Of a stretch of DNA of 64,000 nucleotides, positions 19,298-43,944 are shown in pieces; the first letter of the stretch is position 1; every line of letters begins with the position of its first letter. The DNA comes from Podarcis filfolensis (lineage: Eukaryota), in the NCBI GenBank assembly GCA_964270895.1, contig OZ185436.1; one strand, 5' to 3'. The notes beneath the pieces were generated by a model that did not search any database, was not told where the DNA came from, and worked only from the letters and a program-made list of their open reading frames with translations. Position numbers and translations under genes: made by a program.

Positions 19298-19318
19298 ACA
19301 CACACACACACACACACA

Positions 19319-19352: not shown

Positions 19353-19354
<2 letters not shown>

Positions 19355-19419
19355 GTAGGTGTGCAGTGCTCATAAAAGGGCCTTGTGTATATGATTTATG
19401 GGGCCCTGTAAATGTACTC

Positions 19420-20164: not shown

Positions 20165-20572
20165 TCCTACGGGTTTTGAGATCCTCTGGGAAGGCTTTTC
20201 TATGGGTTCCTCCACCTCCACAGCCACATTTGGTGAGGTCACGAGAGGGGGCCTTCTCAGTGGCAACTCCCTGATAGTGACACCAGCCCAGCCTAGCTGT
20301 CTCTCCACCTTCCTTTCGCCAGACAGGCAAATATATCTTTTGTCCAGACAGGCCTTTGGCCACAAACAGGTCTTCTGAGAGCGGTGGTGTACATTTTCTT
20401 TTTCTCTTTTGTCGTTCTGCTATTTAATAGTTTTCAGTGTTGCTTTTAATAGGGCTGCTTTCAATAGGTATAGGCATAGTCATTTAATTAAATTGTTTTA
20501 ATACATGCTGTGAACTGCACTGGGTCCTGCTCTGGGATAAAGGAGGGATATAAAATAAAAATAAATAAATAC
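20165..20572 (+). mobile_element. L2-like LINE 3' end with (AAAT)n tail
   Basis: Reads LRSSGKAFLWVPPPPQPHLVRSREGAFSVATP...QAF, then a T-rich UTR and gtgaactgcactggg...gggatataaaataaaaataaataaata. Confidence 0.7.
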
Positions 20573-21339
20573 ATTTCTGGCAAACAGCAACTTTCCCTCC
20601 AAAGCTATACCCACACTAGGACAGATCAGTGTAAGTGTTTTATCCCATCCCTATAATGAAGGGGAGTGGGGGTGGGGGTAACCGGTAGCCTTGCTGTGAG
20701 GTAGAGGGCTGCTGCAGAATGATAGTTTGGCCTTGCTGATGTCATCGTCCCCCCACTCCCTGTATTTGCCACAATAGCAGAATTCTTAACCTCTACATCA
20801 ATGAAACAATCAATCAATCTAGTTTTAGAATGTCACAAAATGGAGCCAGGAGAGTAGGTACCATTTATCATGGAGATGTCTGGGCACTGTTCAACAGATG
20901 TTTACAGTAGCACTGAAACTGCAGTTTAAGGGATCTCAGTCACAATGGAAGCACTGGTTGACAAGGGGGCAGGGATCACACTCACACAGCAAGGAAATAT
21001 TGATACCAGAATGCTTGGGGAAGCACCGGAATTCCTCTAAGTGATATTTTCAGGGTTGGGGGCACAGTGTTACAGGAGAACTTCCTGAAGAGTCAACCCA
21101 GAAGATGATGCTGGGGGACCTCTGTTCCAGCCAAACTGCCTTTGGCTTACGAGGTTCCATTCCGTATGCCATGTTGTTGTTGTTGTTTTTAAAAAAACTA
21201 CACAAAACTTCTGCAAGAGATCACTTGGAGGCCTGAGGTGAGGGGCCACCAATATGCATGTGGCACGCTGCTCTGCGTCTCACTTCCAACTGCTTGTCCC
21301 AGTAGGTTGTGAAACTCATCAGCCGCTGCTCAAGAGTTG

Positions 21340-21535
21340 GCTTGGGGATAAATGAGAAGAACTTGGAAGCTTAATCTAGACAAGATGGAGGTGCTGTGGG
21401 TGAGGAAACTGGTAAATCTGGGGGGAGGCTTACAACTAGGACAGGATTGCACTTCCCCTAAAGGATGAAATTCACATCTTGAGGGTCTTCACAGGGTTCT
21501 GTCTGTGGAAGCACAGCTAGAGGCACTGCTAGGAC
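21340..21535 (+). mobile_element. L2-like LINE ORF2 internal fragment
   Basis: Reads KLNLDKMEVLWV...LDRIALPLKDEIHIL, resembling the L2 motif LKLNPDKTEVL...LDGVALPLKD.V.SLGV. Confidence 0.6.
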
Positions 21536-23933: not shown

Positions 23934-23936
<3 letters not shown>

Positions 23937-23977
<41 letters not shown>

Positions 23978-23982
23978 AGAGA
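23937..23982. repeat. (GA)n microsatellite
   Basis: Direct observation. Confidence 0.97.
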
Positions 23983-26900
23983 AAGGAGGCAACAGTACAA
24001 AGCTGCAAAGTGGACAAGATAGCCTACAGTAGGTATCAGTGGAGAATAAATTCTCAAGTGATAAATTTCTATCCACTATATGTGCATAAAGCCCAATCCC
24101 TGTAAGGAATATATCACATTATCATTATCATTCTAATACTAGCAAGTTGAGCAAAGTCAAGAAGGCTGACGACTGTGGGGCAGCAGGACATGCTGAATTT
24201 TGCAACTTTCAAATTCCCAAAATGAGGGGTGCTGAAAAGTTGTAATGTGACTTGTGAATTCAATATAAAATGGTACCTTTTAACTGTGTACTTATTTTTT
24301 CTCACCAAAGAAACCCCAAGAAATTTAATACTGCCACACCTAGGAGTCAAATAAAACAGCCGCATGATGCAGTGGTACGACTTCCCCCCTTCCTCTGTAA
24401 TGCTTGCATTTTTTAATTGTCTCCACTGTTTTAATCAGGTTGTTAAGATATACTGTTTTGTTACTGTAATTGTTTTTACTGGTTGTTAACCATCCCAATA
24501 GTATATTAACTAAAGGACAGCATGAATGCAGGTGTGCGCACATGCACACAAAATAAAATAAATATTTGTGAGACAATTCCAAGACTCATGCTTGAGTTTC
24601 CAGTGGTGAAGTGCAGCTGATGTGAAACAAGATATACTAGCAGCTGTCTCCTACTCTTGAAATAGGCCAGAAATCCCCTTCCTTCCCATTTGCTTTCTCC
24701 TGAAGCAGATGAAAATGGCTCCTCTGAAGCATTTACACTGCCTGGGAGCAGATTCTCCCACCCCCTAATCAAGACCATTTCAAGTACTGCAAGCTAGATG
24801 CGATTAGGCTGCGTATATGTTTCAGTAACAGCACTCAGATGGCCAAGAAGGTATTTTGTGTAACTGGTCTCCTGCTGTGCAAATGGCTGCTCAGTTGACC
24901 TCTGAAGAATCCTCTCCAAGCTGGCAATTGGGAGTGGCAAAAGCTGTGTTGCAAAGAAGGATGATCAACCAGCCTCTACAGACTCATTGTCATTGGGCAA
25001 GGGGCAGTCTGCCCTTACAAGCAAAGGTGAGGGAGGACTGTTCTCTCTCTTGCATCCTCCATTTCATCCATCATGGATGTTTCCTTCATTCTGATTCCAG
25101 CAATTTAAGACAGGGCTATTAGCGTACCCCAGCTTAGTCCTGTGGTTTTTAAACTTTCTTTTGCCTTAGCTTAAGCTTTCCAAAGACAGACTGTGTGAGT
25201 TTCCTCAGGCCTAGTTCATATGTTGCCTATATAAGTGCAGAAAGAAGAATCAAGAGTGATGCATGATCATTTGGGGGATCTAAGAGTGCAATTCAACAGG
25301 TGCAAGGGTGGCAGGGAGGAGAGAACAATATTTTGGGGCACTAGTACTTCTTCCCTGGTTTCTACTGATGTGTGAATGCTCCTTCATTTGGGGGTATAAC
25401 TTCCAATCCAAAGCTATTGACTCCAAAACTTACTAGCCGATTAAAGTAAAGCATTGCACTGGCTTCCTATTTGCTTCCATGACCAACTCAAGGTGCTGGT
25501 GCTGACTTCCAAAGCTGTAAACAATTTGGGACCCAAATATCTGAAGCAGCATGTCTACCCATCCTAGCATCCTTGTACATGAAGATCTTCAAACAAGACC
25601 CCCTTCTACAAGTAATCATTAGTTGGTTGAGTACATTGTGTAGGTTTCAAGGGACAGTGTTGATGCTCTCTGCAAGGAAGCTCTACTGGTGCTGATGCTA
25701 CAACCTTTGCATTGTCAGGTTAAAACATTTTTATTTACTCAGGCATTTAAAAAAATATTGTATGGCACCCTGGAATTCACTAGGTCAATGACAGGCTAGA
25801 TTTTTTTTTAAAAAAAATTATCCTCCTTTCTGTAAAGTATAACTTCAGTGTTCCCCCTTTTTTGTTCTGTGTTTTCTTTCCCAGCCCAAATATTATTTGC
25901 TCATTCCCCGCACCCCCTACTTCTAGTTTAGCATTCATTTCACCATTTGATTTTTCTTGTCCTTCTGTTTCCTACTGCTTTGCCTGAGCTTCCTGGATAC
26001 ATAATTACATTTTTAAAAAGCCAGACAACATTTTGGATTCTACCGCCTACTGAACCATTGAGTCTCCACTGTTCCAAATTGCACTGTTTCCCCATCAGAG
26101 GCAACATCAGATAATGTGGAACTAAATATGAACTAGTATTTCTAAAGAATCCTCCTGCTAGAGTTCTCCTCTCCCCCACCCAAAACTTGCAAAGGGTTGT
26201 TGCCAGAGCATAAGAGGGAAATGGTGCTCTCCAAGATCTCTCAACCTTGGTTTACGCCAAGAGAATCCTTGGCACGAATGGGAGGGAGGAAAGGCCCTTT
26301 TCAAGCAAACATTAGCTCTTCCATAACTCTGCAATGTCATTCATGTTGCTTAAGGGCAGAAGTTTATGGAATGCTGCTCACACCAGGCTGCAAATGAGCT
26401 TTCACAGTGCAAGTGATAGAAAAGAAATGTTTAAAAGGATTAAACTGGAAGCTGGAGGAGGAGGGGCTACTCTTATGCAAATGAGTGGAGGTTGGAAGAC
26501 AGCCCAGCGGGTCAGCCAAGGAACGGCATGCCTCTGCAGATGAAAGAACTATTAAGACTTTAGACCTGCTAGTCTTTAATGTTAAGAGTGCCGTGCAAAT
26601 AATTCATCCATTAATGTAAGGCATGTGGAACTTCTTAAGGTTTATCAGGTAAGATCACTGGTCTGGGTTGACTGCAATGAGAAACAAACTCTCCCCTCTC
26701 AACACAGGGGCTATGATAAAGTGGAAGAGGTTATCAGTGAGGAAGTACATATGGCAGGAGCAGCCAGGTAGTGCCATGGAGCCAACCTCCTGACACCAGG
26801 ATTGCAGTTTACGTGACGGTGGTGGCAAGGTTAGAGGGAACCACTGGAGCCAATACTGCACATTCACCGGTGCTACCACACATCCACCCCAGCTCCACAC

Positions 26901-28164: not shown

Positions 28165-28365
28165 CGAAGTGTTTTGGCACTGGATGCTGGTGCTGTTAAA
28201 GCGCAGGGCAGTAACACGCTGGGATGTGCCAGGGATATGGAAGATGCACTCGTAATTGCGCTGTCCAGACTGTGGCTGTGGCAGGTTTTTGGCAGTCAAA
28301 GTGATGGGCTTCACCACACCCACAGGGATATATATCTGGGTAGATGGAAGGATCTGTGGGCAGTC
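28165..28365 (-). CDS. PLXNA1: Plexin-A1 coding exon (IPT2 domain): [67 protein letters not shown]
   Basis: 201 nt (67 codons), acceptor ctctctcgcag|GAC, donor TCG|gtgagt, phase 0/0. Lies within ORF-track entry 28135..28434. The [22 protein letters not shown] motif is typical of PLXNA1. Confidence 0.97.
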
Positions 28366-29325
28366 CTGCGAGAGAGGTGGAGGAAAAACAGTCAGCATTA
28401 AGATCTTCAAATTCAGATTGTCATGATTAGCCACAGATCATAGTCTCAAGCAGCACACAGCACAAAGACTTTACCCCACACATAAGAGTTCTACAAGAAT
28501 AAATTGAGCTCTCATAAAATATGCTCCTCAACCAGGTGATAAGAATTGGCTAAAAGCTGACCTCCAATCATATATTCTCAATACAAGCTTCTTGCTCCCA
28601 TCAATCCACCTTAGCTAATGAGTCTTCCAGTTGATTGCCCTCAGATTCTGATGTTCTAAAATCTCTGTCAATTTATCTCCTCTTCATGGCTCTATCTACC
28701 TTGCCAAAGGGAACTCATGTACAGTACTAGACTATTACCTGCCCAATTTCCTCAAGCCCTTTCATAGTTCCAAACCATGGTAAGTGCTATGTTACAAGTG
28801 ATCTGTCACTCACGTTTCTCCAGTCTACGCAAACATTATATTCAGACCTCCCAATAGATGTAAACAGTTCATACGCTATTATGGCTGTGTTCAGATGAAC
28901 TCAAGTAAACACTAGGTATTTCTGAAGAGGTTATTCACAAAAGCCTTTCGTACTTCTGTACTGTTATTTCAGAGTCTGCATTCAGAGCATACCCAAGCAG
29001 CTACATAATTCACGTATAAAAAATAATAATACAGATCATAAAACAGATTAAAGCATAAAGTCCTGCCTTAAGTGAATGAAGAAGTTAGTGGAGATTGCAG
29101 TATTGGTATACACCCAGTCATAATGTCATTGGGCAGGTGTGGACACAGACCCCATCAACAGGACCACCTGAGCCTATAGTGACAATGTTGAGTGTGGGGT
29201 CTAAAGAAGGTTTCTGGGTGTTCTCAACCAAACATACACAGAAACTCTCTTCAAACGTCTGCACTAAATGCACGAAGGTCAAAAGAAGAGCCAATGCACC
29301 CTAGCGCACTGGGAGTGATGCTAAC

Positions 29326-29454
29326 ATGGCTCAGGACCACAATACCTGAAGGATTGCCTCTCTTCGTATGAACCTTTCCATACCCAATTGAAACCCTTCT
29401 TTGTGGGCCTCCTCCACAAGAGGTTGAGGGCGGCAGCACAAGAATGATCCTTTT
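29326..29454 (+). mobile_element. L2/CR1-group LINE 3' region, left part (interrupted by the ATP23 retrocopy)
   Basis: ggctcaggaccacaatacctgaaggattgcctctcttcgtatgaacc reads GPQYLKDCLSSYEP, like the C-terminal end of squamate L2 ORF2. It continues at 30555. Confidence 0.75.
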
Positions 29455-30554
29455 GATCACTACGGTGAGTGACCTACGGTGGCTGGCGAGGCCTCCCAAG
29501 CCATGCTGTTTCTGACGTGCTTGAATGGCTGAAGGAGGCTCCTCTGAGATGCCTCCTCCGGAGCAGCCACAGGATCAGGGGAGCCGCGGCTCCAGCGGAG
29601 AGTGGGACGATGACTTCGGGTATGACCTGTTTCCCGAGAGGAGCCGCGGAGGCGGGAAACAGCAGCAGTCCATGCTCTATAAGGCCATCTTCACCAGGAA
29701 CCACAGGTGCCAGCTGATGCTGCAGATTGCCCTGGAAAGCATATGCTAAACTGCTACTTGATGCTATGAAGAATACTGGCTGCACTGTTTTCAAAGATCA
29801 ACACTTCTCATGTGAAGAGTGTAATGGGTGTGCCAGTGGAGGATTCGATTCTTCAACATCACAGATTGTTCTGTGCCAAAACAATATTCATCACCAGTCT
29901 CATATGAACAGAGTGGTTGCACATGAGCTTCTCCATGCTTTTGACCACTGCCGTGCACATGTGGACTGGTTCAATAATATCAGGCATTTAGCTTGCTTGG
30001 AGATTCAAGCTGTTAATCTTAGTGGTGATTGCTCCCTCCTAAATGAAATAACCCGGTTTAAATTTGGATTGAAGCAGCATCAGCAGACCTGCGTAAAAGA
30101 GAGCTGTTTGCTTCATCTTGGCTGTTCGGAACATCAGCAAAGAGATGGACGAGAAAGCTGTGGATGAAGTCTTTGAATCGTGTTTCAATGATCATGAGCC
30201 GTTTGACAGAGTGCCTCACAGCAGATCAGATGCAAAATATGCACATAGAGATTTCCAAAACCGTGACCGGTACTATGCAAAATTTTAGCCAAAAACTGTT
30301 CATTTCTAGCTACAACATTTGGGGACAATTTTCAAAAGATTAATTGTGAAGATAACTGGAAGTCCACAAACAACAAAGAATATTCATGTTTCCTGTTCTG
30401 TGTTTTGTTTGGTGTACAAATTGGTCTAGCAGTCAAACCCCCCCCCCCAATGTACACATAAAAGTTTATGTGAGTATTCTACTGGAAATTAATTTTGCAA
30501 ATGCTTTGGTTCTCATCCCTGGTTTAATAAATGCTGTTTTGTTAAAAAAAAAAA
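29455..30554 (+). pseudogene. ATP23: Processed retrocopy of ATP23 (mitochondrial inner-membrane metalloprotease, XRCC6BP1/KUB3)
   Basis: Intronless ATP23 reading from ATG 29525 to TAG 30286-30288, including [55 protein letters not shown] and [16 protein letters not shown]. Frameshifts near 29741 and 30099. AATAAA at 30526-30531 and an A13 run at 30544-30556. 15-bp TSD aagaatgatcctttt (29440-29454) / aagaatgctcctttt (30555-30569). Confidence 0.95.
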
Positions 30555-30880
30555 AAGAATGCTCCTTTTCTGCAGTGGCTCCCCATTTGTCAAATGTTCT
30601 CCCCAGGGAGCTTCAGCTGGCTCCTTCATTATACACTTTTAGGTGCCAGGTGAAAAGGTTCCTCTTCAACCAGGCCTTGGGCTGATTAACATCTGATGCC
30701 CTTTTAAATATGCTGTGGGGGGGATTCTTGGTTTGTTTTTATATTGTTTTTATATTGGTGTGTTTTTTATATTGTATTTTTATTTTGTGAACCACCCTGA
30801 GATCTACAAATGGAGGGTGGTATACAATTATTACTACTACTACTACTACTAATACTACTACTACCACCACCACTACTATT
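30555..30880 (+). mobile_element. L2/CR1-group LINE 3' end, right part, with T-rich 3' UTR and (TAC)n tail
   Basis: ...FSAVAPHLSNVLPRELQLAPSLYTFRCQVKRFLFNQALG* (end of ORF 30386..30685), then gtgaaccaccctgagatc...gggtggtatacaat and a (TAC)n microsatellite at about 30832-30879. Confidence 0.8.
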
Positions 30881-32452
30881 ACCTTTATCCCCATGTTAAG
30901 TCCTCATGCCATTACAGATAGAGGGGAAAGGGTGTTTTGTCAGGTGAGATGGTAGCACTTCAGCAGTGAAATTCCCTTCCCCTTGTAGTGTGATTGGCAT
31001 CATTGTTGCTTATTTTTCAGAACCAGGTAAAAAAAGTATATGTTCACTCAAGCCTTTGTTGGGGATTGAATCAATTTTCCAGCTGTAAAGGGGTTGCTTT
31101 CTGCATTGCTGCATGATGCTTTCATTTGATGCTTTCCCTGTTTTATGCGATTTTACTGTTTTGTGAAATTAATGGATATCCTTACTTTATTCTGTGACCT
31201 GCCCTGACATCAGCACTTGACGAAGGGGGGAGGGACACAAACTGAAATAATAAATAAGTAAACAAACCCAAGCTGCAGAGCACCAAGCTGGCACATGAAG
31301 CCTTGCAAACCAAATGATAGCTCTGACTGCAGCTCTCTCAGCATGCCTGACCTAGAAAACTGGCCCTATCCTAGTGCAAAGAAATCACCTCCAGGATTTC
31401 AATGAAGCCAATAATCAATCATGATGAACTTCTCAGAGCAGCATCCAGCCCTGCTAACCGTATTCACTAGTATCTCCCATGCTCCTTTATCTGCAAGGTC
31501 CCCACTAATCACTGGCAACCAATCGCTGCATCAGCCCCATCTCTGGAGGCAAAGGGGCATGCATGATGGAAAGGTTGCAGCTGCACCTGACAGAGACTGG
31601 GTTTATTTGCTGACCCAGCCAAGAGCTCAGCTAGCACCTGAGTCATGGCATAACCTTCGCAGTCTCCTTCAGTGAGTGGCTGTTCAGCACCCCAGCAAAG
31701 CAGACACATAAAACTCTGTACAGCATCCCTTGCTGCTCTCAAGAGGACAACTCTGACCTCCCCAAAGCCAGGTTGCAGAGCACAGGGAGAGAATAAAAAT
31801 AAACAGGACCAGGCAAGAAAACAGCCCTGCATCCCAGGAGGGTACCACTTTGGCAACAATAGCCTGATGCAATCCCCAGGCGAGTCAAACTGGGCCTGGG
31901 GGAAAAAGGCATCCCTGCTTTAAATAATAGGGAAAGGGTGGAGAATAACATGTTTTGAAGCAAACAGTGGTAGGATCAGAAACTTTGCTCAGGAGCCTGC
32001 AAACACATTCACCAGAGACTCCAACAGGGGGCAGACCAGCTCCTTCCCCCAGCCCAACTCACCAGCACCAATTCCAGTAAGCAAACTTGTAACAGAGGCA
32101 GGAACAGCAGAAGTGGGTGTGTCTATTCCAGGAACAGTTTCCAACTACACAAAAACAGGACACCTCAAAGTTCTTTATGGGAGCTCATTAACCCTTGAAC
32201 AATACTTGCTTTGCTCGCTGGATTAAACCACAAACTCAAAGCAGTACAGGAGACACATACCCACACCCTGAGGTTTCAAGTTCTCTTGGGTTTTTGAGGT
32301 TCTAAGAAGGTGAGTTGCACTAATTCCCCCCCCCCAAAGATTCCATGATTTCACTGACATACAGGAAATAAAACTCTTTTTCCTCCTTGGGAATCAAATC
32401 CACTAATTCTGGGGCGTCCTGGGCAAACAGATTAGGTGCACATGCCTAAATA

Positions 32453-32799
32453 AAGGGACCCCTGACCATTAGGTCCAGTCGTGACTGACTCTGGAGTTAC
32501 GGCGCTCATCTCGCTTTATTGGCCGAGGGAGCCGGCATACAGCTTCTGGGTCATGTGGCCAGCATGACTAAGCCGCTTCTGGCAAACCAGAGCAGCGCAC
32601 GGAAATGCCGTTTACTTTCCCGCCGGAGCAGTACCTATTGATCTACTTGCACTTTGAGGTGCTTCCGAACTGCTAGGTTGGCAGGAGCAGGAACCGAGCA
32701 ACGGGAGCTCACCCCGTCGCAGGGATTCGAACCGCCGACCTTCTGATCGGCAAGTCCTAGGCTCTGTGGTTTAACCCACAGCGCCACCCGCGTCCCTCT
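32453..32799 (-). mobile_element. Sauria SINE, full length and young
   Basis: The minus strand starts GGGACGCGGGTGGCGCTGTGGG with a tRNA-like A box (32776-32786) and B box GGTTCGAATCC (32723-32733), and ends ...GGACCTAATGGTCAGGGGTCCCTTTA. Perfect 13-bp TSD acatgcctaaata (32440-32452 / 32800-32812). CpGs are largely intact. Confidence 0.93.
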
Positions 32800-33797
32800 A
32801 CATGCCTAAATACTATAGCCCAAAACACAGAGTGCCTGAAAGGACACACCCAGCATGCGGATACAAAACGTGGGTGCACAGCAAATGGAGGACATGAGCT
32901 AAGAGCCTCTCTCCCAAAACATGCACACATTTTGCTGACTGGCTTTTTGAGACAGACCCTGCTCAATCCTGCTACGTCACATGTTTGGCGTCTACAGGGA
33001 GCCATGTGTCATCCAGCAACAATTTTGCCCCGCTCAAAAACAGGAAACACCTGGTGCTAAGGAGCCTTTCCTAAAGAGTCTCATGGCTCCGCACTCGTGA
33101 TGCTGGGCTGGGAGCTACACAGCAGAAATGGCTCTGACACTGGCCAGGCCTTTCCCAGCTGTTCCCTCTTCCGGAGCAGCCAATTCCAAGGACTAATGAG
33201 AACGCTCCCTTACCCATACTCCACACGTCTGTCATCTCCTTAGCCAGGTCTGCATATTTTCAGCATGTACGTTCATGGATACTGCAAGCAACGGAATTTG
33301 GAACTAATTCTGAGCGCACAGGATGCCAGTCTCCAGTTCGAAAAGCAAGCTGTCAGGCCATATTATTTCAGAGATAAATAGGAAAGCCTCTACATCACAT
33401 CTGCTGAGGTCTCTTCTCGGATGTCCCTCATTTTAAAGGACATCCCTGATTTAGCAAAATTGCACCTGTGTGAAACAGCTGAGAAGATGGGAGGGCTCCG
33501 CTCTGTGCAAAAAACTAACGCACAACTTTTGGGGTCTGTGGTTAACAGATCTCTGAGTGAACAGGAGTTTGCAAGAGAAGAACATTTTTAAAAAGTGAAA
33601 AGTGGGGTGTCCTTTTAGGGGATCATGGAAAGGTATCCTTAGGAATCGGAGTTCTCTACCCATGCTCACCATCCCCTGTCTTTCCCTTATTGCTAAATAA
33701 TGCCAAACAACTCTTACATTTCTTGTCCACAATCAAAACCCTTGCCAAAATTTCTGTAAGTGAAAACATGCGAATGAGCTCAGTTAACTTGCATAAT

Positions 33798-34036
33798 AGG
33801 CTTCTGAATACTAATATTTACTCAGAGTAGACCTAACAGACCTAAGTTAGTAATGGCTATTAATGGGCCTATTTTGAGTAAATGTTAGTTAAGCACAACC
33901 CATGAAATCGATTATTCCAAAATTGTGATTGAATGATAGGAACTTTCAGGCTGCAATCTTATGAAAATTTACAAGGGAGTCAGCCCCAGTGAACCAATAA
34001 GAGGCTTGCCTCAGATACATGCATAGGATTGTGCTC
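33798..34036. repeat. Adjacent palindromic MITEs: family B (33798-33901) and family C aggctgcaatc..ggattgtgct (33948-34036)
   Basis: ctaatatttactcagagtagacc is inverted with ggcctattttgagtaaatgttag, and ggctgcaatc is inverted with ggattgtgct. Confidence 0.6.
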
Positions 34037-37000
34037 TCCACTGCTCACCTATGGGGGGAACCAGGGTAAAGGAGAGCTGAACAGACTCAGTGGTGAAATT
34101 CTCCACAGTAAGCATCTGCCTTCAAAGCACGTGCTCATCTATTCAACATCAAACACTCCCCCACCCTACCTTCAACCTCCTCAAATCATGCTTTTAATTA
34201 GCAGATCATTTTGCTATAATAGCCAATCACATTCTGTTGTCATGCAAAAGTCTTAATTTTTTTAAAAAATTGAAATTCGGGAAATTCAGTACTGAACAGC
34301 AATTATTTTAAAAAATGAAGAATCTGTGGAATTAGGAAATGAAGAAGAACATTCCTGGATGACTTCACATGAGCATGTTTTAACTTTCCCACAGGCAGCA
34401 AGAAAAACCTTCCACGTACTGCTGCTTGCTATCTGTTTTTGTTCCCAGCAGAAATTTGAGAGACAATGAATGAGAAACTATTAAAAAAAGGGTTAAGAGC
34501 CTGTGTGGGCGCTGCACTAAAGGATTTTTCCATTACACCTCTCTGGCCAAAACCCACAAGACACAGACAAGCTTGCAATTTAGCCAGACCAAGGCTTGCC
34601 TAAAATAGCTCCAAGGATTAATCTAACATGCATAAACGAATAGTAGGATGCAAAGGGTAGGATGCATCTCTGGCCCCAGCCCATCCCAAAACGTAAGCAA
34701 GAGGCACTGAAAAGGGGAGTGTGTTGGCATCCTCACCACATTCAGAGGTCCCTCTTTAACCACTTCTCTTTGGAAGCCACATGAAACAAGCTGAGTAAAA
34801 GCCAAGGCCTGTTTGTTCCACCCAGAGCAGTGGGCCAATAAGAACATCAAGTCCAATGGCATTTTGTCTGTTCTGCTTCCCTCCAGAACCAAGAACCGCA
34901 GAGGCAGTATCCAAAGAGGAAGGAAGCAGGTTCAGAGGAGGCTTCTCCAAACATCATGCAACTGGCTGAGGAGGAATAAAAATTTAACACAATGTGATGA
35001 AAATCTTCAGCTGCAGATTGCTGCATATCACACCTCCGTTAAAGACAATGGAGGTGATCAGGCTGTTACTCCCACCCCGCTGCCCATTGGGCAAGTTCAA
35101 CTGAGCATGAGTAGATATAAGGTGTTCACAGCTTAAAAGGCAGCTAAGTTGTGCTTTTTCTCAATTTGGATCAGAGTTGTTTTAGGGGGAGACACATCAA
35201 AATGCAGTATTTTTCAAGAAAAAACAGGACAGACGCAGGATAGGTGTGTGTGAACACTGCTTCCCCAACCAGCAGTGGGAGCACACTGGATGCAGAGTAA
35301 ATGGGAATGTGCATACAGCCACAGTCATGCACTGATCACTGCTTCAGCTACATAAGGTTTAGAATTACATCTGCCAAGGTTGCTTGCTTGCTATTTCTTC
35401 CCTGTGTTGAGTCTTCCTGAAAGACTTGGGCCATACATGCTGCCCCAGCTTAGAAGAAAAAGAATTCAATCACTATATATGTTCTTCCAAGCTAGGTTAC
35501 ACCTGCTTGTTTTTGCATGCCACTATACCATTCACCTCTCTATATATCTATATATCCCAACACTTCTTCTTTTGTATGCCTGTACCCTGTGGATTTAGAG
35601 TTTACCAAGGCTACGGCCCCGTTCCCCATTCCCTGAAGGTACAGGAGCAAGGATTTGGCTTTTTCTTTTCTTTTTTAGGGGAAGGATGCCCCCAACAGCT
35701 CTTACAAACTGCTTAAAAAATGTGGCACTATGCCACTCCTGCTAGCTGTGACTCCCCTTGCTGTTTCAGGTACTCCGCATCTAGCAGCCAATAAATATGA
35801 ACGCTCATCAACATGGGCAGAGTAAAAGAAACATAAATGCTTAATGGCATTTTCTTTTTTAAAAATGCCATTCAAGGCTAAGGGCTTTTCAAAGTCTACC
35901 GCTCTCTTTTGTTTCACAGCCTTTTGGTCTCACAGTTTACAAACATACTGATGAGTGTCTGCTTGTTTCTCAAGCTTACTCCTTCAGCTCTTGGGGGTAC
36001 AAAGGGATGCCCCGCTTGTCTTGCTCATCCATTTCTTCCCAGGTCAACAGGATCAGGCTCACCAGCAACAGCTTCTGCCTTTAATAACAGTTGACAGAGT
36101 TTGACCCGTCGTAAATAAGATAAATCCCTCTTTCCTCCCACGTAAGCAGCCCTTGCAAAAGAAACTGTGCTGCTGGTGGCTGGGTGCTGGATGAGTAACT
36201 GCCAATCTCCCATGGTTCCTTTTCCTGGAGGGCCCAAACTCCCAGAGATGATAAAGGGTGGGGTGGAGGGGAATTAATTGTTCGTTGCTGGAAGCTCGAA
36301 CTCTTCGATGTGGAGCCCGACACTCATCAGCCTGGAGGGGCTGCGAGACAGGAGTCACAGTGGGAAATGACACAGGGAGAGAAGGAAGTGAAAAATACAG
36401 CTGAGGGCACCTCCGCTATGCCAGCACTCACAGCAAAAGATTAGAGCGGGATTCATCTAATGCAACACGGGAGCTGTCAAGCTGGCTGTAGCGCAGCACA
36501 GCACAAAAGGCCTTGTCTAGAGTAATCCATGAAAGCAGAGGACCTAAAACAAACAAGTGCTAGGAGCTAATATGAGGCAGAGCCCAAAGGACATGACTGC
36601 TTCGTACTCAAAGCCAGAGGGGAATATGTGTTAGTCATGAGAATGCAGAATGGCTGGAAAGGTTTAAAATGAGATTAAAAAGCGCATAGGAGTTTAGGGC
36701 AGACTGAAGGAGGAGGTCTGAGGAGAAAGATGAGAGATGCAGCTGCTGATACACACACCTTTTTAAAAAATGACATAGAAGGACTCAAACCTCACTGGCA
36801 GAACTGTGAGGTTCTGCTGCCGTGAGGGGGAAAGAGTTCTGCACGTGTTCAGAGGTGCTCTTTTTATGACTGCTGGCACTCCAAGAAGGGTCTGTGGCTA
36901 AGCGTTGATGAGTCCAGACTCAAACTTCTCAGAGAAAGGAAAGATGAGTACCTATGAAAAGGTGGGAATTGGCATTTATGGACCCAAAATAACTTAAATG

Positions 37001-37436
37001 TTTTAGCTTATCCTTGAAGGTGCTCAGCTTATAAAAAATAAGAGTTAAGGTTAAGAACTATAGTATTTCTATATGACAAAAAGTAATTTTCTTTTTAAGT
37101 AGAACTATCAGGCACTGAAGAAGATTCTGTTGAAATGTCTTTAGCCAAATGGCTATTGAGGAGCATTCATTTCTATAGGTACTAATGGGCATTTGGCCTT
37201 CATAAGAGTACTGTTTTAAGATTTCTTTAGGGGTCATAACCTCCCCCCCCCATCTCCTTTAAATACAACAGGACAGCTGGGAAATGCTTACAAATGAGGG
37301 AAGGGCTGTTGTGCTAGCATAATGTATTCTGTAAGCCCAGAGAAAAGGGAAAGGGGGTACTTTTAGGCAGCCAGTGAAACGTGCAAAGTTACTAGAATGC
37401 AACCTTTCTCCATTTCATTCTGGTCAAGATGTTAGA

Positions 37437-37570
37437 TCCACTGTGGAGAAACTGTGGCCTTCCATACGTGGTTTGATTACAAGCTGCCATCATCCCTGGC
37501 CATGTTGGCTGCGGTTGATGGGGGTTGGGAGTCCAGCCATTTCTGGAGGGCCATGGGTTTCCCATCTCTG
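37437..37570. repeat. Palindromic MITE family A copy
   Basis: actgtggccttcca ... ctggagggccatgggtttcccatctctg, with imperfect terminal and internal inverted repeats. Confidence 0.65.
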
Positions 37571-37866
37571 TGCTGAATTGTGAAGTTTTGCTTACTGGGA
37601 AGAGAAGAGGTGTTTCCTTTGCTTGAATTGCCAAGTGTGTCACCTAGCTGAAACCAGGCAATTAGCCCTATAAAAGGCCTGTTGGGCATATCTTGCACTG
37701 CATACAAGAGGGTCAGAAAAGGAAATAGTGTGCGTGAGAAATTTCTTTGTCACTTAGTGGGATCAACAAGATCCATTTTAAAAAAACTCTCACTTTATAA
37801 ACTGTGGGTTATAAACCTCCAACCTGCAGGTTAAACCTGGTCCTCAGAAGTCTCTCACTGGTCCTG

Positions 37867-37869
<3 letters not shown>

Positions 37870-37917
<48 letters not shown>
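37870..37917. repeat. (CA)n microsatellite
   Basis: Direct observation. Confidence 0.98.
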
Positions 37918-37922
<5 letters not shown>

Positions 37923-39559
37923 TGTTTTTGTCAGGCTAGGATGTTTCTGAATTCTGCTGGTGCCTGTTGGTTTTATGGATACGGAGGGGTGTGTGAGTGT
38001 GTGTAGGTACTAGCCTACCACACAAGGTAACATTTGCATCAAATGTTCCACCTACTTTTGCCTCTAGCTCCACCCACTACCACTGGAATGTGGCCCTCAA
38101 AAGGTTTCCCAAAAACAAATGTGGCCCTTGGGCTGAAAACGGTTTCCCCACTCCTGACTTATAACGGTTCCCTCCACCAGAGTGGAGGGCAATTGCTGTC
38201 AATCTGTATTCTGACACACACAATCTGGAAGGGCGTCCTTATTTCTCTGTTGCGGCAAAAAAGAAACAGAACGGCGGCAGCGAGGTCTGCTGGCCTCTTA
38301 AAGGGCAAGAGCCACAGAGTGGTGTGAGCTCTCTAGGGATTAGACACAGGAGTCCTTTGTGACCCACCAAGTCCTTTTGAAGAACACAAGTCCTTTTGCA
38401 TTCTGCTGACAGGGCTGAATAGCAAAATGCCTCTTAAGATATTGTGCCACTGTTTATGGTCTGTCCACAGTGCTTTCTGTGGAGGCAGAGGTGGATTTTA
38501 TGGTCATCTGAGCCTGCCAAGGGCACACTCATTTTCACAATAGGAGTTAGATATGAATTTCAGTATTTTCCAAATACGGTTTGCCGGATGGCAACATAGC
38601 TACGTGTTCTCAGTTTGCCCTTGGTTCATTGAGACTCGGGGTGGTTTTTCTCCCCTCATCCCACCCAACAAAAGGCAGGAAACTGTTTGAAATAGTGCAT
38701 GCTGCCTAACTTATGGAGGAAGGTGATAATTTACAAGGCAGAAACCACAAAAATAGCCCTGTCGTTTATCAGGGACATCACATACTGGCCTTTGGAACCA
38801 CCAAAAGAAGGTGTCTGAAAGGTCACCTAACTGCAGCTGCAGTTGTTGACATCAAGGCTCTGCAAATCCATCCTGCATCCTCTCTTTGTCCATAGTTCCC
38901 CCTTTGTACATCTTTGTTGGGGTCATATATTTAACACACCCTAACCTCTAAGTGAAACAGTTCTGAGCATCACAGGTAGCTATGAACTATTTTCTCTAGA
39001 CAGAGTGTTTCATGTTTCAACATCTCTCATCAACCACAATTTTAGACTTAGCCTCCAATTTGAAAGCAGATCTCACAATCAGAATATTAACATATCTAAA
39101 TTAGCTACAAATGCCTGTTATGATCAAGTACCATGTTACCCTTTAATGAAACAACTATAACATGGCACTTGCCTTGAGCCAGGTTTGGCTAAGGCTTAAC
39201 TCTCAGGTATGTTCTCAGTGCCATGATTCATCACTAGAACATGTGGAGAACATAATTTCATACATGAATCTATGCTCTTCACATGAAACTCGTTGTATGA
39301 AATGTATGAAAACATACATTTCACTCATTGTTCAGTTATTAACCCCAGTGCCCACATATCTAGAATCAGAGGGGAAAGAGGCCTGCCTTCTAGGAAGACT
39401 TTATCTCCAGCAGCAATATGATTAAAAATTAAGCCCTGATAAGTTGATCACAGCTCTCTACCAGATCACCTTTGACTCCAAATGCACCAAAGTTCTCTGT
39501 ATGCATTCAACTATATTTTAGAGAGCCCTCTACAACTTCATTTAATTTAAATGCTCATA

Positions 39560-39595
<36 letters not shown>
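39560..39595. repeat. (GAT)n microsatellite
   Basis: Direct observation, 12 units. Confidence 0.97.
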
Positions 39596-40163
39596 CCTTC
39601 CCAAAAAGGCAAAAGCCCCTGAGAAAATCAACCAAGTAGAAGGATGGATGGAACTGTTTTGGACAGGCAGTAGAATTTAACTGAAACATTCAGTAGGTGT
39701 TCACAGAATGTCTTTAATTTCCAAAATAATTACAAACTGGGGTTTAAGTCTGTCTCAGAATACTTGTGTCACCCTGATCCTAAACATATGAGGCTGGCTG
39801 TGGTCAGCAAGTGGTGACAGAAAGGAACTCTGTACATGTTAGAAACAATTCTCTTTTTTACTTCTCTTTCTAACTTCATTCTTTCCAAGAACTAAACACT
39901 GGAATTGAAAACAGACTCCGGAGCTACTCTACTTCAAATTATACCTCATTCCTGGGGAGTTATTTTCTTTCAACATGGGATGTCACACTGTACAGAGTTG
40001 ACAGCCCCTGCCTTCACTACTCACCCAGCTCATAGTAGCTAGACAGACAACTAGCCACTGTGGAATAACAAGAATTGCTGCTATACAAGGAATCTTCAAA
40101 ATGTGTAATCCTCCAGAGCAAATGCAAGAAAAGCCAGTAACTGGTTACTTTATTGGGAGGATG

Positions 40164-40213
40164 CATTACATTATATTACATTACATTACATTACATTACA
40201 TTACATTACATTA
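40164..40213. repeat. (CATTA)n pentanucleotide microsatellite
   Basis: 10 units, one of them a TATTA variant. Confidence 0.97.
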
Positions 40214-41985
40214 GTCTAAAAAAAACCTCATTGCAACAAAAAGGCACACAGTGAGATTGTTCTGTTGTCCTGAGTTCATTAGCCAGTGCACTGTATTATT
40301 TTAGCACTCCTTGCTCCTTTGCAATCTAAAAGCGAAACTCTGTCCTTGCCTCTAAGAATTGACACTCAGGATACAAATGCTCATTTCTGCAGGGCAGGTG
40401 ATCTGTCACTTGGAATCACTGATTCTCCTTGACAATTCAAACTCCACATCACATGAACCAAATCAGAAATGAAATAAAGTATGCATTTTAGGAAATGGGT
40501 GGTTTCCTCAGCTCTTACATTAAAGTCATCCTTAAGGACACTGGAGGATTCACCATATATACTGTGGAAATCTCCATGTGTCTCACCTGCAAGGTAGCTT
40601 AGAAAACAATTGAAAAATCTGTCGCAATCATAACTCGGATTTACTGGAGGAACACTCAATCAATGCAGCAGAGAAGGAGTTAAAGATGTGCCTGAGGACT
40701 GAAATGACAGACTAATAAAGATAAGACAGGAAGAGGAAGGAAGGACCCCAGTGAGTGCAACAGTGACCTATCTGAAACAGACATTCTGGCCCGCAGGCTT
40801 CTCTCTTAATGGCTTGCAGACTGACTGTGCAACCAGGGTAAATCAAAAAAAGGTGAAGAAGCAAAATCCTCTTGGTGCGGAAAGATTTCTCTCCACTGAA
40901 GTTTCCAGAGCATCCCGCCACACAAAGGTCTCACAAGCCAGGCCCTTATCTTCTGAACAGCCTGGCTAACGTTTCCAGTCCAAGGGCCTCGCCGTCCCAC
41001 TGCAAACCTTCTGGGGACCACTTGCCCAAGTTGGTGTGGCTGAAGTGTAAAGTGCACATGACTGAGGCCAGCTTGAAAATCTTATTAATGCATATGATTA
41101 ACTGGAATTAATGTTTAAAACATTAATTGAAATTAATTCATTGCCCTGGTATGGTTTGTTACAGTCACCAAAAACTAATACTGCTTGACTTTAATGGTCT
41201 GTAGCAATTATTATTCTCCCCCACAGCACCACCTTTAAACATTAATGAATTAATTGTCATTGCTCCCCCTGCCTGGGGCATAAGGAGAAGGGTGGAATGG
41301 CAACCACTTCAGTACAATTGATAGTCTACAATTCCCTTTATAAAGCACCATCTGTAGGGGCCCTTTTCTACTACCTCTGAACTGAAATTCTCCTCTTTCT
41401 CTGAACATCAGCCTTTGGGTTTGAAGCTTAAAAGCCTCTCCATGAGGTGACAACACCTCCCCCACTTCACTGTGTTGCAGCTCTCCCTCTCACTGGTGAC
41501 CATTGTTCAAATTTCCTCCCCATCATGGTCCTGGGCTGAGAGTCATGAGGAGGAAAACGGCACCTTCCTCACTAATGCACCATTGAGAACCTCTGCATAA
41601 CACTGTCCTCAGTGATGCTCATAGCAGTGATATCATCCAAGCACTTACAGAAATCTCCAAGCGCTCCAGAAGCATTAGTTGCAGCAGAAAGCAGCAGCAG
41701 CTCAATGCAGAGACCCCAGAAAACTGTAGGGCCCTTTGTAATCCCTACAAAGCCCAGCCACTGACAGTTACATGCCCTGTATTGCTCTCATTATGCCTTT
41801 AATTTTTGTCACCACCACTGAAAGCAAAATGTCTTGGGAGGCCTTAGGGGCCATATCTGGACCAGGGGCTGCAAGTATGTCACTGCTATGACAAACTATA
41901 GTTTACAGCTAGAATGAGCCTTGGGCTCATACACTCTCCCCCTTCTCCTTTCATGTAGAGAGCAGGAGGCCCCTGGCAGCATTTA

Positions 41986-42226
41986 CAGTGGAACCTTGGT
42001 TCTCAAACTTAATTCATTTCGGAAGTCTGTTCAACTCCCGAAACGTTTGAAAACCAAGGAGCAGCTTCCAATTGGTGCAGGCACCCCAGAAACAATAGCT
42101 GACAGCCACATCAGACATTCGGCTTCCAAAAAACATTCGAAAACCGGAACATTTACTTTTGGGTTTTCAGTGTTCGGGAGCCGATTTCTTCGTCAACTAA
42201 AGGGTTCAAGAACCAAGGTTCCACTT
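41986..42226. mobile_element. Tc1/mariner-type MITE, 241 bp
   Basis: TIRs CAGTGGAACCTTGGTTCTCAAAC / AAGTGGAACCTTGGTTCTTGAAC, with flanking TA at 41984-41985 and 42227-42228. Confidence 0.88.
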
Positions 42227-42264
42227 TACTTTCATTTCCAATGAATTTTGGCTCGTCATTGCAT

Positions 42265-42400
42265 GTGAACAAGGGATTCTGGTTCATAACAAACTCTGTT
42301 CAGTTTCAAAGCAAGCTAACTTCAAACCATGAATTGTGAAGCTGGCTTGCTAAACTAACCAGAGTTTGTTATAAACCATGACTCTTAGTTCACAGGCAAC
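42265..42400. repeat. Palindromic MITE family D (aagccaacttcaaacca..tgaagctggctt)
   Basis: aacaaactctg..gcaagctaacttca is inverted with tgaagctggcttgc..ccagagtttgtt. A related copy lies at 62845-62985. Confidence 0.6.
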
Positions 42401-43829
42401 AGCACACCAAGATTAACTGAAACTAAAGCCACACTGCTGAAAGCTCTCCTCTCAACCATGTAGCAAGTAAAAAGAGTTGGTGCTAGGAGCAAGGTTATAT
42501 GACGTGTGAGCCCAAGGCTTGCACAAGTTCGTTCCAGCTCATGCAAGTCATGAGAAACAATGGCACAACATGACTTGCTAACCTGTTCTCTGTATCAGAT
42601 TTAAGGAAGTTTTATGATGCTATTCTAAGCACATGTAGTAGTTCATTGGAAAGTAATGGGACTTGCTTCCATAAAGGGTCAAGATGCTTGATTAACATGG
42701 AGAGTAGGTTAAGGTCTGTCTTCTTTTGCTCCACTAAATGCCTGTCCAGCCTTTCTTTTACAACTTCAAAAGGGAGAAAATTCCACCAAGTTTCCAAGAC
42801 AGTTTCTTACACTGTGGAATTTCAGCCAGGCAGGTCTTCCTGTAGATTAGCCAAAATACTTTTAAACCATTACTTCTTATACTATCACAGACAGAACAAT
42901 TCACAGAAGTGAACAGAATGAACAATTATTTGTTCTCTTTCTCCCACAAAGAAGCCTGTTAACCTTTTTTCCACACCTCCAAGCCTTTTCTCCGATCTTG
43001 TTCCATAGCTAAACATACCAAGGTCCTTCAAGCATCTGAAGGAGGAGGAGAGGACAGAGGGTGAAAAAAGAGCTGTGAATGGAGGGGGACACTTTCCCCT
43101 CCTCTGGACCCCCTGGGAAACACAACAAACCTGCTGCACCTGGAACTGGGTGTGGAGAGTGCAGCTGAATGAGACATAGCTGAGGAAGTAGCATCCACCT
43201 TGATACCTGCCCATAAAAAGCAAGTGCAGAGTGAGAAACTAGGGTCATAGTCATGGTTTCCAGGAACTTTTCTCAATGTGAGACTTTTGTGGGTGAGCTG
43301 AGTGTTTGCCTGGATCCTGGGAGAGAACCCAGGGGGCTGAGAAGGAATGTCTGAAGGAAAATGAATTGATACTGATTGAGATATATCAGTAACTTTGTAT
43401 TAATGTAATGTTTTAATATGTAACTGTGCATTTGTAATATTTTGTTTAAGATGTCTGTTGTTGCTTCAGTATTCTGTAAGTCACTTGAAGATACTTTTAA
43501 TATATTAAGCGGTATGGAAAGTAAATAAGCAATAAAAAAAAGCCATCAACTTTCCCCGTATGACCTGCCTTTTATATTCTCTCTTACCCTTGTGGCTCTC
43601 TTAAATCATTTTCCACATTTTTAAACAGTGATGCCCAGAACAAAGCCCCATATACAAATTACCACAGTACAAAACAGGGTGGTGTTATTTTTTACTACCT
43701 GAGCCTTGGATCAGATGCTTTTAAATGGTACAGGTCTTTTTGTATGTAGCATTGTTATGAAAAAAGGGATGGGGGGAGAAACGAGAGGATCCACAATACA
43801 GAGTTGCAAAGGCAGTCTTGGTAACTTAC

Positions 43830-43944
43830 CTCAGACATGTTGACACGCCCTTCCAGAAAGGAACAGTCAGCGGCATTGTGGGTACAAATATGTCGATATT
43901 TACACCAATGGCAAGGGAAGAATCCATTCACACAGGACAGGCAA
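43830..43944 (-). CDS. PLXNA1: Plexin-A1 coding exon (PSI2 domain): (S)[38 protein letters not shown]
   Basis: 115 nt, acceptor ttcttgcag|T (phase 2), donor GAG|gtaagt (phase 0). Translation matches recalled vertebrate PLXNA1 [34 protein letters not shown]. Confidence 0.96.

What the first reader, a model, noticed from the sequence alone, without database searches (positions are those of the whole stretch)
29440..30569. Full-length ATP23 retrocopy nested in a LINE tail, antisense within a PLXNA1 intron
Seen: the complete mRNA architecture (about 70 nt 5' UTR, CDS, 3' UTR, AATAAA, A13) bounded by a 15-bp TSD with one mismatch. Removing the insert restores a contiguous L2-like ORF2 tail, which gives the order of events: LINE first, retrocopy second. 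Established: poly(A) plus a ~15-bp TSD with an A-rich start is the signature of target-primed reverse transcription, typically by L1, and retrocopies are much rarer in sauropsids than in mammals. Inference: L1-type (or RTE) machinery captured a germline-expressed mRNA in this lineage. The antisense orientation keeps the AATAAA off the PLXNA1 strand. PLXNA1 pre-mRNA carries about 1.1 kb antisense to ATP23 mRNA, a possible endo-siRNA source.
Basis: partly seen in the sequence, partly recalled or inferred. Interest (0 to 1): 0.7.

Follow-up and report, generated by a model that had tools for sequence, protein, structure and literature searches.

The report
Dead ATP23 retrocopy in PLXNA1 intron
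This is an ordinary dead processed pseudogene: a reverse-transcribed, intron-less copy of the lizard mitochondrial protease gene ATP23 that landed inside an older LINE fragment in an intron of PLXNA1 and has decayed since.

Summary
Window 29455-30556 (+) is a near full-length copy of lacertid ATP23 mRNA. It has a 70-nt 5'UTR, all six exons with the five introns missing, the 3'UTR, AATAAA, and an A13 run where the parental gene continues differently. It is flanked by a 15-bp target-site duplication with one mismatch.

It is dead. A 5-nt deletion at 29739/40 and a 2-nt deletion at 30099/100 break the frame. Half the CpGs of the former CpG-island exon are gone, and substitutions are spread evenly over codon positions.

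Public DNA runs show the same insertion, with both deletions, in three closely related taxa. The same runs also hold a separate intron-bearing parental ATP23, of Podarcis type. A P. muralis Ensembl model shares 9 derived residues, so the copy predates that split.

The flanks are one very abundant repeat whose other copies run straight across the insertion point. Its coding tail matches the C-terminus of reverse-transcriptase proteins, so it is a LINE. The L2 clade was not tested, and the rejoined frame is not open.

Plexin-A1 exons at 43830-43944 and 28165-28365 (-) place the copy antisense in a 15.5-kb intron.

No retrocopy RNA was seen. The scan has already found another dead retrocopy in this genome. 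Low interest.

The parts
29440..29454 (.). 5' copy of the target-site duplication (AAGAATGATCCTTTT), made of LINE-tail sequence
29455..29455 (+). One extra G between the TSD and the first base that matches the parent. It is not in the TSD and not in the three parental genes. It is consistent with a reverse-transcribed cap G (inference).
   Evidence: alignment
29456..29524 (+). 5'UTR of the ATP23 mRNA copy. Similarity to the P. muralis and L. agilis parental genes starts here, 69 nt upstream of the ATG.
29525..30288 (+). ATP23 (Peptidase_M76) coding region, exons 1-6 joined without introns. The frame is broken by a 5-nt deletion at 29739/29740 and a 2-nt deletion at 30099/30100. The HELLH zinc motif is still legible. 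There are no in-frame stops other than those caused by the shifts.
30289..30543 (+). 3'UTR of the copy, with AATAAA at 30526-30531. Relative to the parents it lacks 1 nt (30317) and 7 nt (30389).
30544..30556 (+). A13 run, the poly(A) tail remnant. The parental genomic sequence diverges here (TGGTTTGG...).
30555..30569 (.). 3' copy of the target-site duplication (AAGAATGCTCCTTTT)
29270..29454 (+). Left half of the host LINE 3' fragment (decayed ORF2 C-terminal coding tail). Summed contig word-depth in the DNA runs is about 100-200 times the single-copy level.
30570..30823 (+). Right half of the host LINE: the end of ORF2 (stop at 30683-30685) plus its 3'UTR. Depth is about 600-2000 times single copy. 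It matches the C-terminus of RT-bearing Varanus proteins. A (TAC)n-like microsatellite follows at 30821-30889.
43830..43944 (-). PLXNA1 exon (PSI2 domain; mouse Plexin-A1 residues about 628-671), with donor GTAAGT just after 43830
28366..43829 (-). The 15,464-nt PLXNA1 intron that holds the LINE fragment and the retrocopy. The retrocopy lies about 1.1 kb upstream of the acceptor, antisense.
28165..28365 (-). Next PLXNA1 exon (Plexin-A1 residues about 667-738), with acceptor ...CTCGCAG and donor GTGAGT

Best explanation
A spliced, polyadenylated ATP23 mRNA was reverse-transcribed and inserted in the germline of an ancestor of the Podarcis wall lizards. The mechanism was target-primed reverse transcription of the L1 type, used in trans. 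The target lay inside an older 5'-truncated LINE 3' fragment, in the intron between the PSI2 exon and the following exon of PLXNA1. The copy is antisense to that gene.

The copy had no promoter of its own. It became methylated, drifted to fixation and has decayed neutrally. In this species it is a non-coding processed pseudogene with two frameshifts. The intron-bearing parental ATP23 elsewhere in the genome supplies the function.

Shown here: the mRNA origin, the separate parent, LINE before retrocopy, the broken frame, and sharing among related taxa. Inferred: the L1 enzyme, the cap-derived G, and the lack of function.
For: 1. mRNA origin. All six parental exons are colinear and all five introns are absent. 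Similarity starts 69 nt upstream of the ATG and ends at the cleavage site 13 nt after AATAAA. There the copy has A13 and the parents have unrelated genomic sequence.

2. TPRT signature. There is a 15-bp TSD with one mismatch. The nick site on the bottom strand reads TCTT/G, pyrimidine-rich before a purine.

3. Independent reality.
- Contigs from DNA runs of three labelled taxa bridge the 5' junction: X1 record 2 with 0 differences, X2 record 17 and X9 record 26.
- Contigs from two of them bridge the 3' junction: X2 record 23 and X9 record 31.
- None of these runs carries the CAGTC or AC letters that the parental mRNA has at the two deletion sites.

4. Separate parent.
- The same DNA runs hold a second contig that covers only 29456-29741, with 22-23 differences. 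It stops at the exon 1 boundary.
- A 1047-nt contig from a run guessed to be RNA, from a fourth taxon (X15 record 10), is the spliced parental mRNA with the frame intact.

5. Decay.
- There are 25 retrocopy-specific CDS substitutions, 6/9/10 by codon position.
- They split 17 nonsynonymous to 8 synonymous, omega 0.56, not different from neutral (p = 0.21).
- Ten are CpG transitions.
- CpG observed/expected in the exon 1 part is 0.54, against 0.94-0.97 in the parents.

6. Age.
- The P. muralis model P0131 shares 9 derived residues with this copy. There are 10 window-only and 13 P0131-only changes.
- No derived site is shared with the P. muralis parent alone.
- Overall, 34 of 1066 sites are retrocopy-specific, against 13-27 per parental lineage.
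- The tree is a near-polytomy.

7. Host LINE and host gene: for the LINE and for PLXNA1.
Against: - The enzyme is inferred only. The nick site (TCTT/G) is not the textbook TTTT/AA, and no L1 of matching age was examined.
- No RNA run of this species was available, so 'not transcribed' is not shown. Contigs show presence, not absence.
- The P. muralis orthologue is modelled by Ensembl as a 246-aa open frame, although without a start codon. Some past or lineage-specific coding use cannot be excluded.
- One X1 contig (record 5) carries the retrocopy-type 3'UTR but leaves the window's sequence at 30545. This is unexplained. No X1 contig across the 3' junction was among the rows shown.
Confidence: 0.93

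Rival explanations
1. The copy is, or recently was, a functional retrogene: a second ATP23-like protease, or a shortened protein kept by selection.
For: - Apart from the two deletions there is no in-frame stop, and the HExxH motif survives.
- The P. muralis orthologue (P0131) is modelled as a 246-aa open frame without those deletions.
- Omega on the retrocopy branch is 0.56, which is not significantly different from the parental lineages either.
Against: - Two frameshifts are present in all three DNA taxa laid. The first leaves only 74 residues, ahead of the protease domain.
- Substitutions are spread evenly over codon positions and half the CpGs are lost.
- P0131 itself lacks a start codon. 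It also carries changes at positions that are invariant in the parents, such as L137F and H143Y next to the zinc motif.
- No retrocopy-type RNA contig appeared in the one RNA-like run laid.
Confidence: 0.03
2. The copy acts as RNA. Because it is antisense in the PLXNA1 intron, the PLXNA1 pre-mRNA carries 1.1 kb complementary to ATP23 mRNA and feeds endo-siRNAs or otherwise regulates ATP23. Alternatively, its U13 plus CAG and its ATTAAA alter PLXNA1 processing.
For: - The geometry is correct.
- Perfectly identical runs of up to 97 nt remain between the copy and the parental exons of P. muralis and L. agilis.
- On the PLXNA1 sense strand the tail reads T13-AACAAAACAG, followed by ATTAAA.
Against: - No small-RNA or RNA data were available.
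- The sequence decays at the neutral rate, with no conserved block.
- Intronic antisense repeats are commonplace. The intron has 15 other AATAAA or ATTAAA hexamers on that strand.
Confidence: 0.03
3. The feature is an artefact: cDNA contamination or a mis-assembly that placed ATP23 mRNA sequence into the PLXNA1 intron.
For: None beyond the general possibility. One X1 contig (record 5) leaves the window at 30545.
Against: - Independent DNA runs from three taxa and several studies hold contigs across the junctions.
- The copy differs from the parental mRNA by about 5-8% and by five indels, which contamination would not give.
- A TSD is present.
Confidence: 0.01

Closest known systems
L1-mediated processed pseudogenes (retropseudogenes) of vertebrates
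   Same: Intron-less, near full-length mRNA copy with a poly(A) remnant after the parental AATAAA. It has a 15-bp TSD, a location unlinked to the parent, frameshifts, CpG decay, and neutral substitution pattern.
   Different: The host is a lacertid lizard, where retrocopies number in the hundreds rather than thousands (PMC3136929). The nick site TCTT/G is only loosely L1-like. The enzyme was not identified.
Parental ATP23 (mitochondrial inner membrane protease ATP23 homolog, Peptidase_M76) of Lacertidae
   Same: About 92-94% nucleotide identity over the whole mRNA, with the same start, stop and polyadenylation site. The HExxH motif is retained.
   Different: No introns and two frameshifts. It has 25 private CDS substitutions and sits in a PLXNA1 intron, not beside the gene with TPR and RPAP3_C domains that neighbours the parent in Zootoca.
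UniProt A0A670IXP6 (Ensembl gene model, Podarcis muralis; P0131)
   Same: Shares 9 derived residues with the window copy that no parental ATP23 has (W27, Q46, L138, L160, Q163, V165, I177, K255, F256). It most likely descends from the same retrocopy.
   Different: It lacks the two frameshifts of the window copy, has 13 private changes, and has no start codon. Its DNA and locus could not be fetched.
Squamate CR1/L2-type LINEs (stringent 3' end, microsatellite tail)
   Same: The host repeat's coding tail matches the C-terminus that lies about 160 residues after the RVT_1 domain in Varanus RT proteins. The element ends in a short tandem repeat, not poly(A). Copy number rises towards the 3' end, as expected for 5'-truncated LINEs.
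   Different: This copy is only about 440 bp, has no RT domain and a broken frame. The clade (L2 or CR1) was not tested.

Membership tests
Processed pseudogene / retrocopy made by target-primed reverse transcription | All parental introns are absent and the exons are colinear | tested here: met
   Six exons of three lacertid ATP23 genes align end to end. GT..AG introns of 100-1800 nt in the parents are missing.
Processed pseudogene / retrocopy made by target-primed reverse transcription | Untemplated poly(A) at the parental cleavage site, downstream of the polyadenylation signal | tested here: met
   AATAAA at 30526-30531 and an A13 run at 30544-30556. The parents continue TGGTTTGG....
Processed pseudogene / retrocopy made by target-primed reverse transcription | Target-site duplication flanking the insert | tested here: met
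   15 bp with one mismatch. Chance is about 4e-8 per fixed pair of places.
Processed pseudogene / retrocopy made by target-primed reverse transcription | A separate intron-bearing parent in the same genome | tested here: met
   X1, X2 and X9 each hold a second contig covering 29456-29741 only, with 22-23 differences, that runs on into unlike sequence.
Processed pseudogene / retrocopy made by target-primed reverse transcription | L1 endonuclease target (TTTT/AA on the nicked strand) | tested here: inconclusive
   The nicked strand reads ...ATTCTT/GTGC: pyrimidine run then purine, but not the consensus.
Functional retrogene | Intact open reading frame | tested here: not met
   Deletions of 5 nt and 2 nt shift the frame. 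The first stop falls after 74 codons. Both deletions are present in three taxa.
Functional retrogene | Purifying selection (dN/dS well below 1) | tested here: inconclusive
   17 nonsynonymous to 8 synonymous changes, omega 0.56. This is not different from neutral (p = 0.21) or from the parents (p = 0.78). The sample is too small.
Functional retrogene | Transcription of the copy | not testable with these tools
   No RNA run of this species was offered. The one RNA-like run laid (another taxon) held only the parental mRNA contig.
Peptidase_M76 (ATP23) | Match to the family profile above the curated cut-off | tested here: met
   129.7 bits for the middle piece and 26.3 bits for the C-terminal piece, against a cut-off of 25.2. 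The best named relatives are lacertid ATP23.
LINE (non-LTR retrotransposon) ORF2 3' end, as host of the insertion | Homology to the C-terminus of proteins with a reverse-transcriptase domain, colinear across the insertion point | tested here: met
   There are 23 hits. P0149, P0144 and P0151 have RVT_1 followed by this tail at their C-terminus. P0149 residues 386-403 lie on the left flank and 403-442 on the right flank. Contigs of other copies join the flanks.
L2 clade of LINEs | RT phylogeny or a clade-specific 3' structure | not tested
   No reference L2 or CR1 sequences were at hand. The Rfam scan gave nothing, including for the UnaL2 3' element, which I recall (from memory) to be in Rfam. 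The microsatellite 3' end fits either CR1 or L2.
PLXNA1 (Plexin-A1) | Exons best match Plexin-A1 over A2 and A4, in order on the minus strand | tested here: met
   Bit scores for Plexin-A1 against the best of A2/A4 are 76 against 60, 125 against 103, and 122 against 100, for exons at 43.9 kb, 28.3 kb and 7.8 kb. Residue numbers rise as coordinates fall.

The most novel reading that the evidence does not exclude
The retrocopy was kept as a working ATP23-like retrogene, or as a regulatory antisense RNA against ATP23 carried in PLXNA1 pre-mRNA, for part of lacertid history. It may still be open in Podarcis muralis, with independent loss in the lineage of this window.
Probability: 0.04. Interest if true: 0.4.

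Novelty: new member of a known kind. Interest (0 to 1): 0.12.

Why it matters
It matters little in itself. It is a clean, datable example of L1-type retroposition of a host mRNA in a lacertid. It shows that such machinery was active around the early history of Podarcis and the Lacertini.

It gives a presence/absence marker that could help with the poorly resolved lacertid radiation. It also warns annotators: the P. muralis orthologue is modelled as a protein-coding ATP23 paralogue, and several Varanus gene models end in the same LINE tail.

Tried and rejected
- BLAST of the rejoined flanks against the window found no second copy of the LINE tail. The repeat nature had to come from public runs instead.
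- Pfam gave nothing for the 42-aa LINE tail or for the N-terminal ATP23 piece.
- The ESM Atlas gave only unnamed 49-57-aa clusters.
- Rfam (one chance-level mir-317 match, E 0.79) and ARAGORN found nothing in 28900-31100. So there is no tRNA-derived SINE head and no known 3' RNA element.
- Fetching the DNA of the P. muralis retrocopy model P0131 failed; it is not on record.
- The ML tree of the CDS with Rhineura as outgroup could not place the retrocopy among the three parents (supports 43 and 67).
- The earlier-findings index has no note on ATP23 in this genome.
- The artefact and retrogene readings were considered and rejected, as set out under rivals.
- Exons of the public parental genes were joined only inside local scripts, for alignment and codon counts.
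- The N run at 19420-19551 was left alone.

Full report
**What is in the sequence**

On the plus strand, 29440-29454 reads AAGAATGATCCTTTT and 30555-30569 reads AAGAATGCTCCTTTT. A 15-mer that matches with at most one mismatch at one fixed pair of places has a chance of about 4e-8.

Between the two copies lie, in order:
- one G at 29455;
- 69 nt of 5'UTR;
- an ATG at 29525;
- ATP23-like coding sequence up to a stop at 30286-30288;
- 255 nt of 3'UTR, with AATAAA at 30526-30531;
- a run of 13 A at 30544-30556.

Pfam Peptidase_M76 matches the reading-frame pieces at E 1e-37 and 7e-6. The word search returns vertebrate ATP23, with lacertid ATP23 on top.

**It is a copy of a spliced mRNA**

I fetched the ATP23 genes of Zootoca vivipara (L001), Podarcis muralis (L002), Lacerta agilis (L003) and, as an outgroup, Rhineura floridana (L004). 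I derived their six coding exons so that the translation equals the deposited protein, with GT..AG at every intron.

The window stretch aligns to all six exons in order with no intron sequence. Identity is 91.6, 93.2 and 94.0%.

Similarity to the P. muralis and L. agilis genes begins at 29456, directly after the TSD plus one G. It ends at the poly(A) site, where the parents read ...GTTAA then TGGTTTGG and the copy has its A run. Two of the 13 A could be parental and two belong to the TSD, so 9 to 13 are untemplated.

The extra G at 29455 is absent from the three parents and from the TSD. It fits a reverse-transcribed cap, but that is an inference.

**It is dead**

In the parental frame the copy lacks 5 nt exactly at the exon 1/2 junction (29739/40). 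The frame then stops after 74 codons. It also lacks 2 nt at 30099/100. Other than that there is no in-frame stop, and HELLH is still legible.

The pattern of change is as follows:
- There are 25 substitutions private to the copy in 764 aligned CDS sites, falling 6/9/10 on codon positions 1/2/3.
- 17 are nonsynonymous and 8 synonymous (omega 0.56). This is not distinguishable from neutrality (p = 0.21) nor, with so few sites, from the parental lineages.
- 19 are transitions and 10 are CpG to TpG or CpA.
- The part derived from the parental CpG-island exon has 14 CpG (observed/expected 0.54), against 27-28 (0.94-0.97) in the parents.

This pattern fits a methylated, unselected sequence.

**Independent reads**

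A search of public runs found 20 holders in 9 studies, with coded names. I laid four runs on 28900-31100.

- X1 (organism A) matches the window without a difference over 28900-29424 and 29395-29769. The second piece crosses the 5' junction and the 5-nt deletion. X1 is therefore this species.
- X2 (organism B) and X9 (organism C) are about 1% apart from the window. Both have contigs across the 5' junction (28900-29769; 29395-29769) and across the 3' junction (30489-30646; 30489-30652).
- None of the three carries the CAGTC or AC letters at the two deletion sites.

The insertion and both frameshifts are therefore real and shared by three related taxa. This rules out contamination or mis-assembly.

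**The parent exists separately**

Each of the same three DNA runs also holds a second contig of 1-3.9 kb. It matches only 29456-29741 (exon 1 plus 5'UTR) with 22-23 differences and then runs on into unlike sequence, as an intron and a promoter would. Parent-type 3'UTR contigs with the extra T and TGTCGAA are present too.

The parental exon 1 has the codons for K and V (29706 G>A, 29714 C>G). Among the sequences in hand, V there occurs only in Podarcis. So the window most likely comes from a Podarcis species.

X15 is organism D, a run guessed to be RNA. It holds one 1047-nt contig over 29504-30538. That contig has 51 differences, CAGTC and AC at the two sites, and the P. muralis-type G>A at 29580. 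It is the spliced, intact parental mRNA. No retrocopy-type contig was seen in X15. That is weak evidence against expression and comes from another taxon.

**Age**

The UniProt entry A0A670IXP6 (P0131) is an Ensembl model from P. muralis of 246 aa without a start codon. It shares 9 derived residues with the window copy that no parental ATP23 has. There are 10 changes private to the window copy and 13 private to P0131, and P0131 lacks the two frameshifts.

The copy therefore predates the split of this species from P. muralis, and the frameshifts came later.

- Over 1066 aligned mRNA sites, 34 changes are private to the copy, against 19, 13 and 27 for the P. muralis, L. agilis and Zootoca parents.
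- No site is shared only with the P. muralis parent.
- The ML tree is an unresolved near-polytomy with a long retrocopy branch.

The source mRNA thus dates from about the common ancestor of these three genera, or from the very base of the Podarcis stem. I could not test Lacerta or Zootoca for the filled site.

**The host repeat**

- The summed contig word-depth in the DNA runs rises from about 124 (single copy in X1) to 13,000-26,000 over 29270-29417. It reaches 80,000-245,000 over 30528-30823.
- Many contigs from other copies join 29421-29424 to 30564-30566. Between the two sides they carry about 27 diverged letters that correspond to 29425-29454 (tables 5 and 5c). Other copies of the repeat are therefore continuous across the insertion point.
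- The 42-aa reading frame after the TSD (stop at 30683-30685) found 23 proteins in the representative library. Three of them (P0149, P0144, P0151) carry an RVT_1 domain with this motif at their C-terminal end. They are Varanus komodoensis 'reverse transcriptase domain-containing' proteins.
- P0149 aligns colinearly with the window. Residues 361-377 and 386-403 lie on the left flank. These two matches are weak singly. Residues 403-442 lie on the right flank, at E 1e-8.

So the host is a 5'-truncated LINE 3' fragment of about 440 bp, ending in a (TAC)n-like microsatellite. The TSD is made of LINE sequence, which gives the order LINE first, retrocopy second.

The two halves are not in one frame after rejoining, so no open frame is restored. 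I did not test whether the LINE is L2 or CR1. Rfam and ARAGORN found nothing.

**The host gene**

Minus-strand exons match mouse Plexin-A1 better than A2 or A4:
- 43830-43944 matches residues 628-671;
- 28165-28365 matches residues 667-738;
- about 7669-7929 matches residues 767-834.

All have canonical splice sites. The copy lies antisense in the 15,464-nt intron 28366-43829, about 1.1 kb from the acceptor. The LINE fragment is antisense too.

On the PLXNA1 sense strand the tail reads T13-AACAAAACAG and then ATTAAA at 30528. The intron has 15 other such hexamers on that strand, so this carries no weight.

**Mechanism and context**

A poly(A) tail, a 15-bp TSD and a pyrimidine-run/purine nick site (TCTT/G) point to L1-type TPRT acting in trans. 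CR1/L2-type and RTE elements recognise their own 3' ends and do not leave poly(A).

In Anolis, five LINE clades including L1 are active (PMC5389967). Retrocopy numbers track L1 numbers across chordates, with 404 retrocopies in Anolis, 78 in chicken and 4738 in human (PMC3136929). A lizard processed pseudogene is therefore expected, not rare. The scan has already followed up another dead retrocopy in this same genome (s1-328081; not checked by me).

**Loose ends**

- One X1 contig (record 5, 2120 nt) has the retrocopy-type 3'UTR but leaves the window at 30545.
- No X1 contig across the 3' junction was among the rows shown.
- At a few CDS sites, all X1 depth differs from the window. The likely reason is that the filter for human-like conserved sequence removed the retrocopy contigs there.
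They do not affect the verdict, because X2 and X9 bridge that junction.

**Verdict**

It is an ordinary, dead processed pseudogene. Its interest is low.

Noticed in passing
window 21055-21704 (+), 25448-25561 (+), 5335-5514 (+): Further decayed LINE fragments that match the RT domain or C-terminal region of the same Varanus RT proteins (tblastn E 1e-4 to 1e-9).
   Followed up: no
window 30528-30556, minus strand: On the PLXNA1 sense strand the retrocopy's tail reads T13-AACAAAACAG, which looks like a cryptic 3' splice site, followed by ATTAAA. No RNA data were available to test any use.
   Followed up: partly
P0131 (UniProt A0A670IXP6, Podarcis muralis): Ensembl models the orthologous retrocopy as a protein-coding ATP23 paralogue of 246 aa without a start codon. 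It is probably an annotated pseudogene.
   Followed up: partly
P0144, P0150, P0143, P0148 (Varanus komodoensis and other gene models): Host-gene models (harmonin, BioT2, DUF4612, ParcG) end in this LINE ORF2 tail. These are chimeric or exonised annotations.
   Followed up: no
window 29506 (organism B, run X2): A 6-nt deletion in the retrocopy's 5'UTR, seen only in organism B. There are also poly(A) length and letter differences at 30544-30546 in organism C.
   Followed up: no
window 30291-30545 (run X1, record 5): A 2120-nt contig with the retrocopy-type 3'UTR stops matching at the poly(A) start and continues for 1865 nt unlike the window. This is unexplained. It may be a graph path through the high-copy LINE tail or a second copy.
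   Followed up: no
window 30821-30889: A (TAC)n-like microsatellite directly after the LINE 3' end. The read tool skipped it as a repeat.
   Followed up: no
window 289-441, 8839-9012 (minus strand): Further plexin-like exon ORFs (IPT domains, for example [13 protein letters not shown]) downstream in the gene. They were not checked against solved structures.
   Followed up: no
L001 1-1435 (Zootoca), L003 1-1371 (L. agilis): In these lizards the parental ATP23 lies head to head with another gene. In Zootoca that neighbour has TPR and RPAP3_C domains. This locus differs from the PLXNA1 locus of the retrocopy.
   Followed up: no
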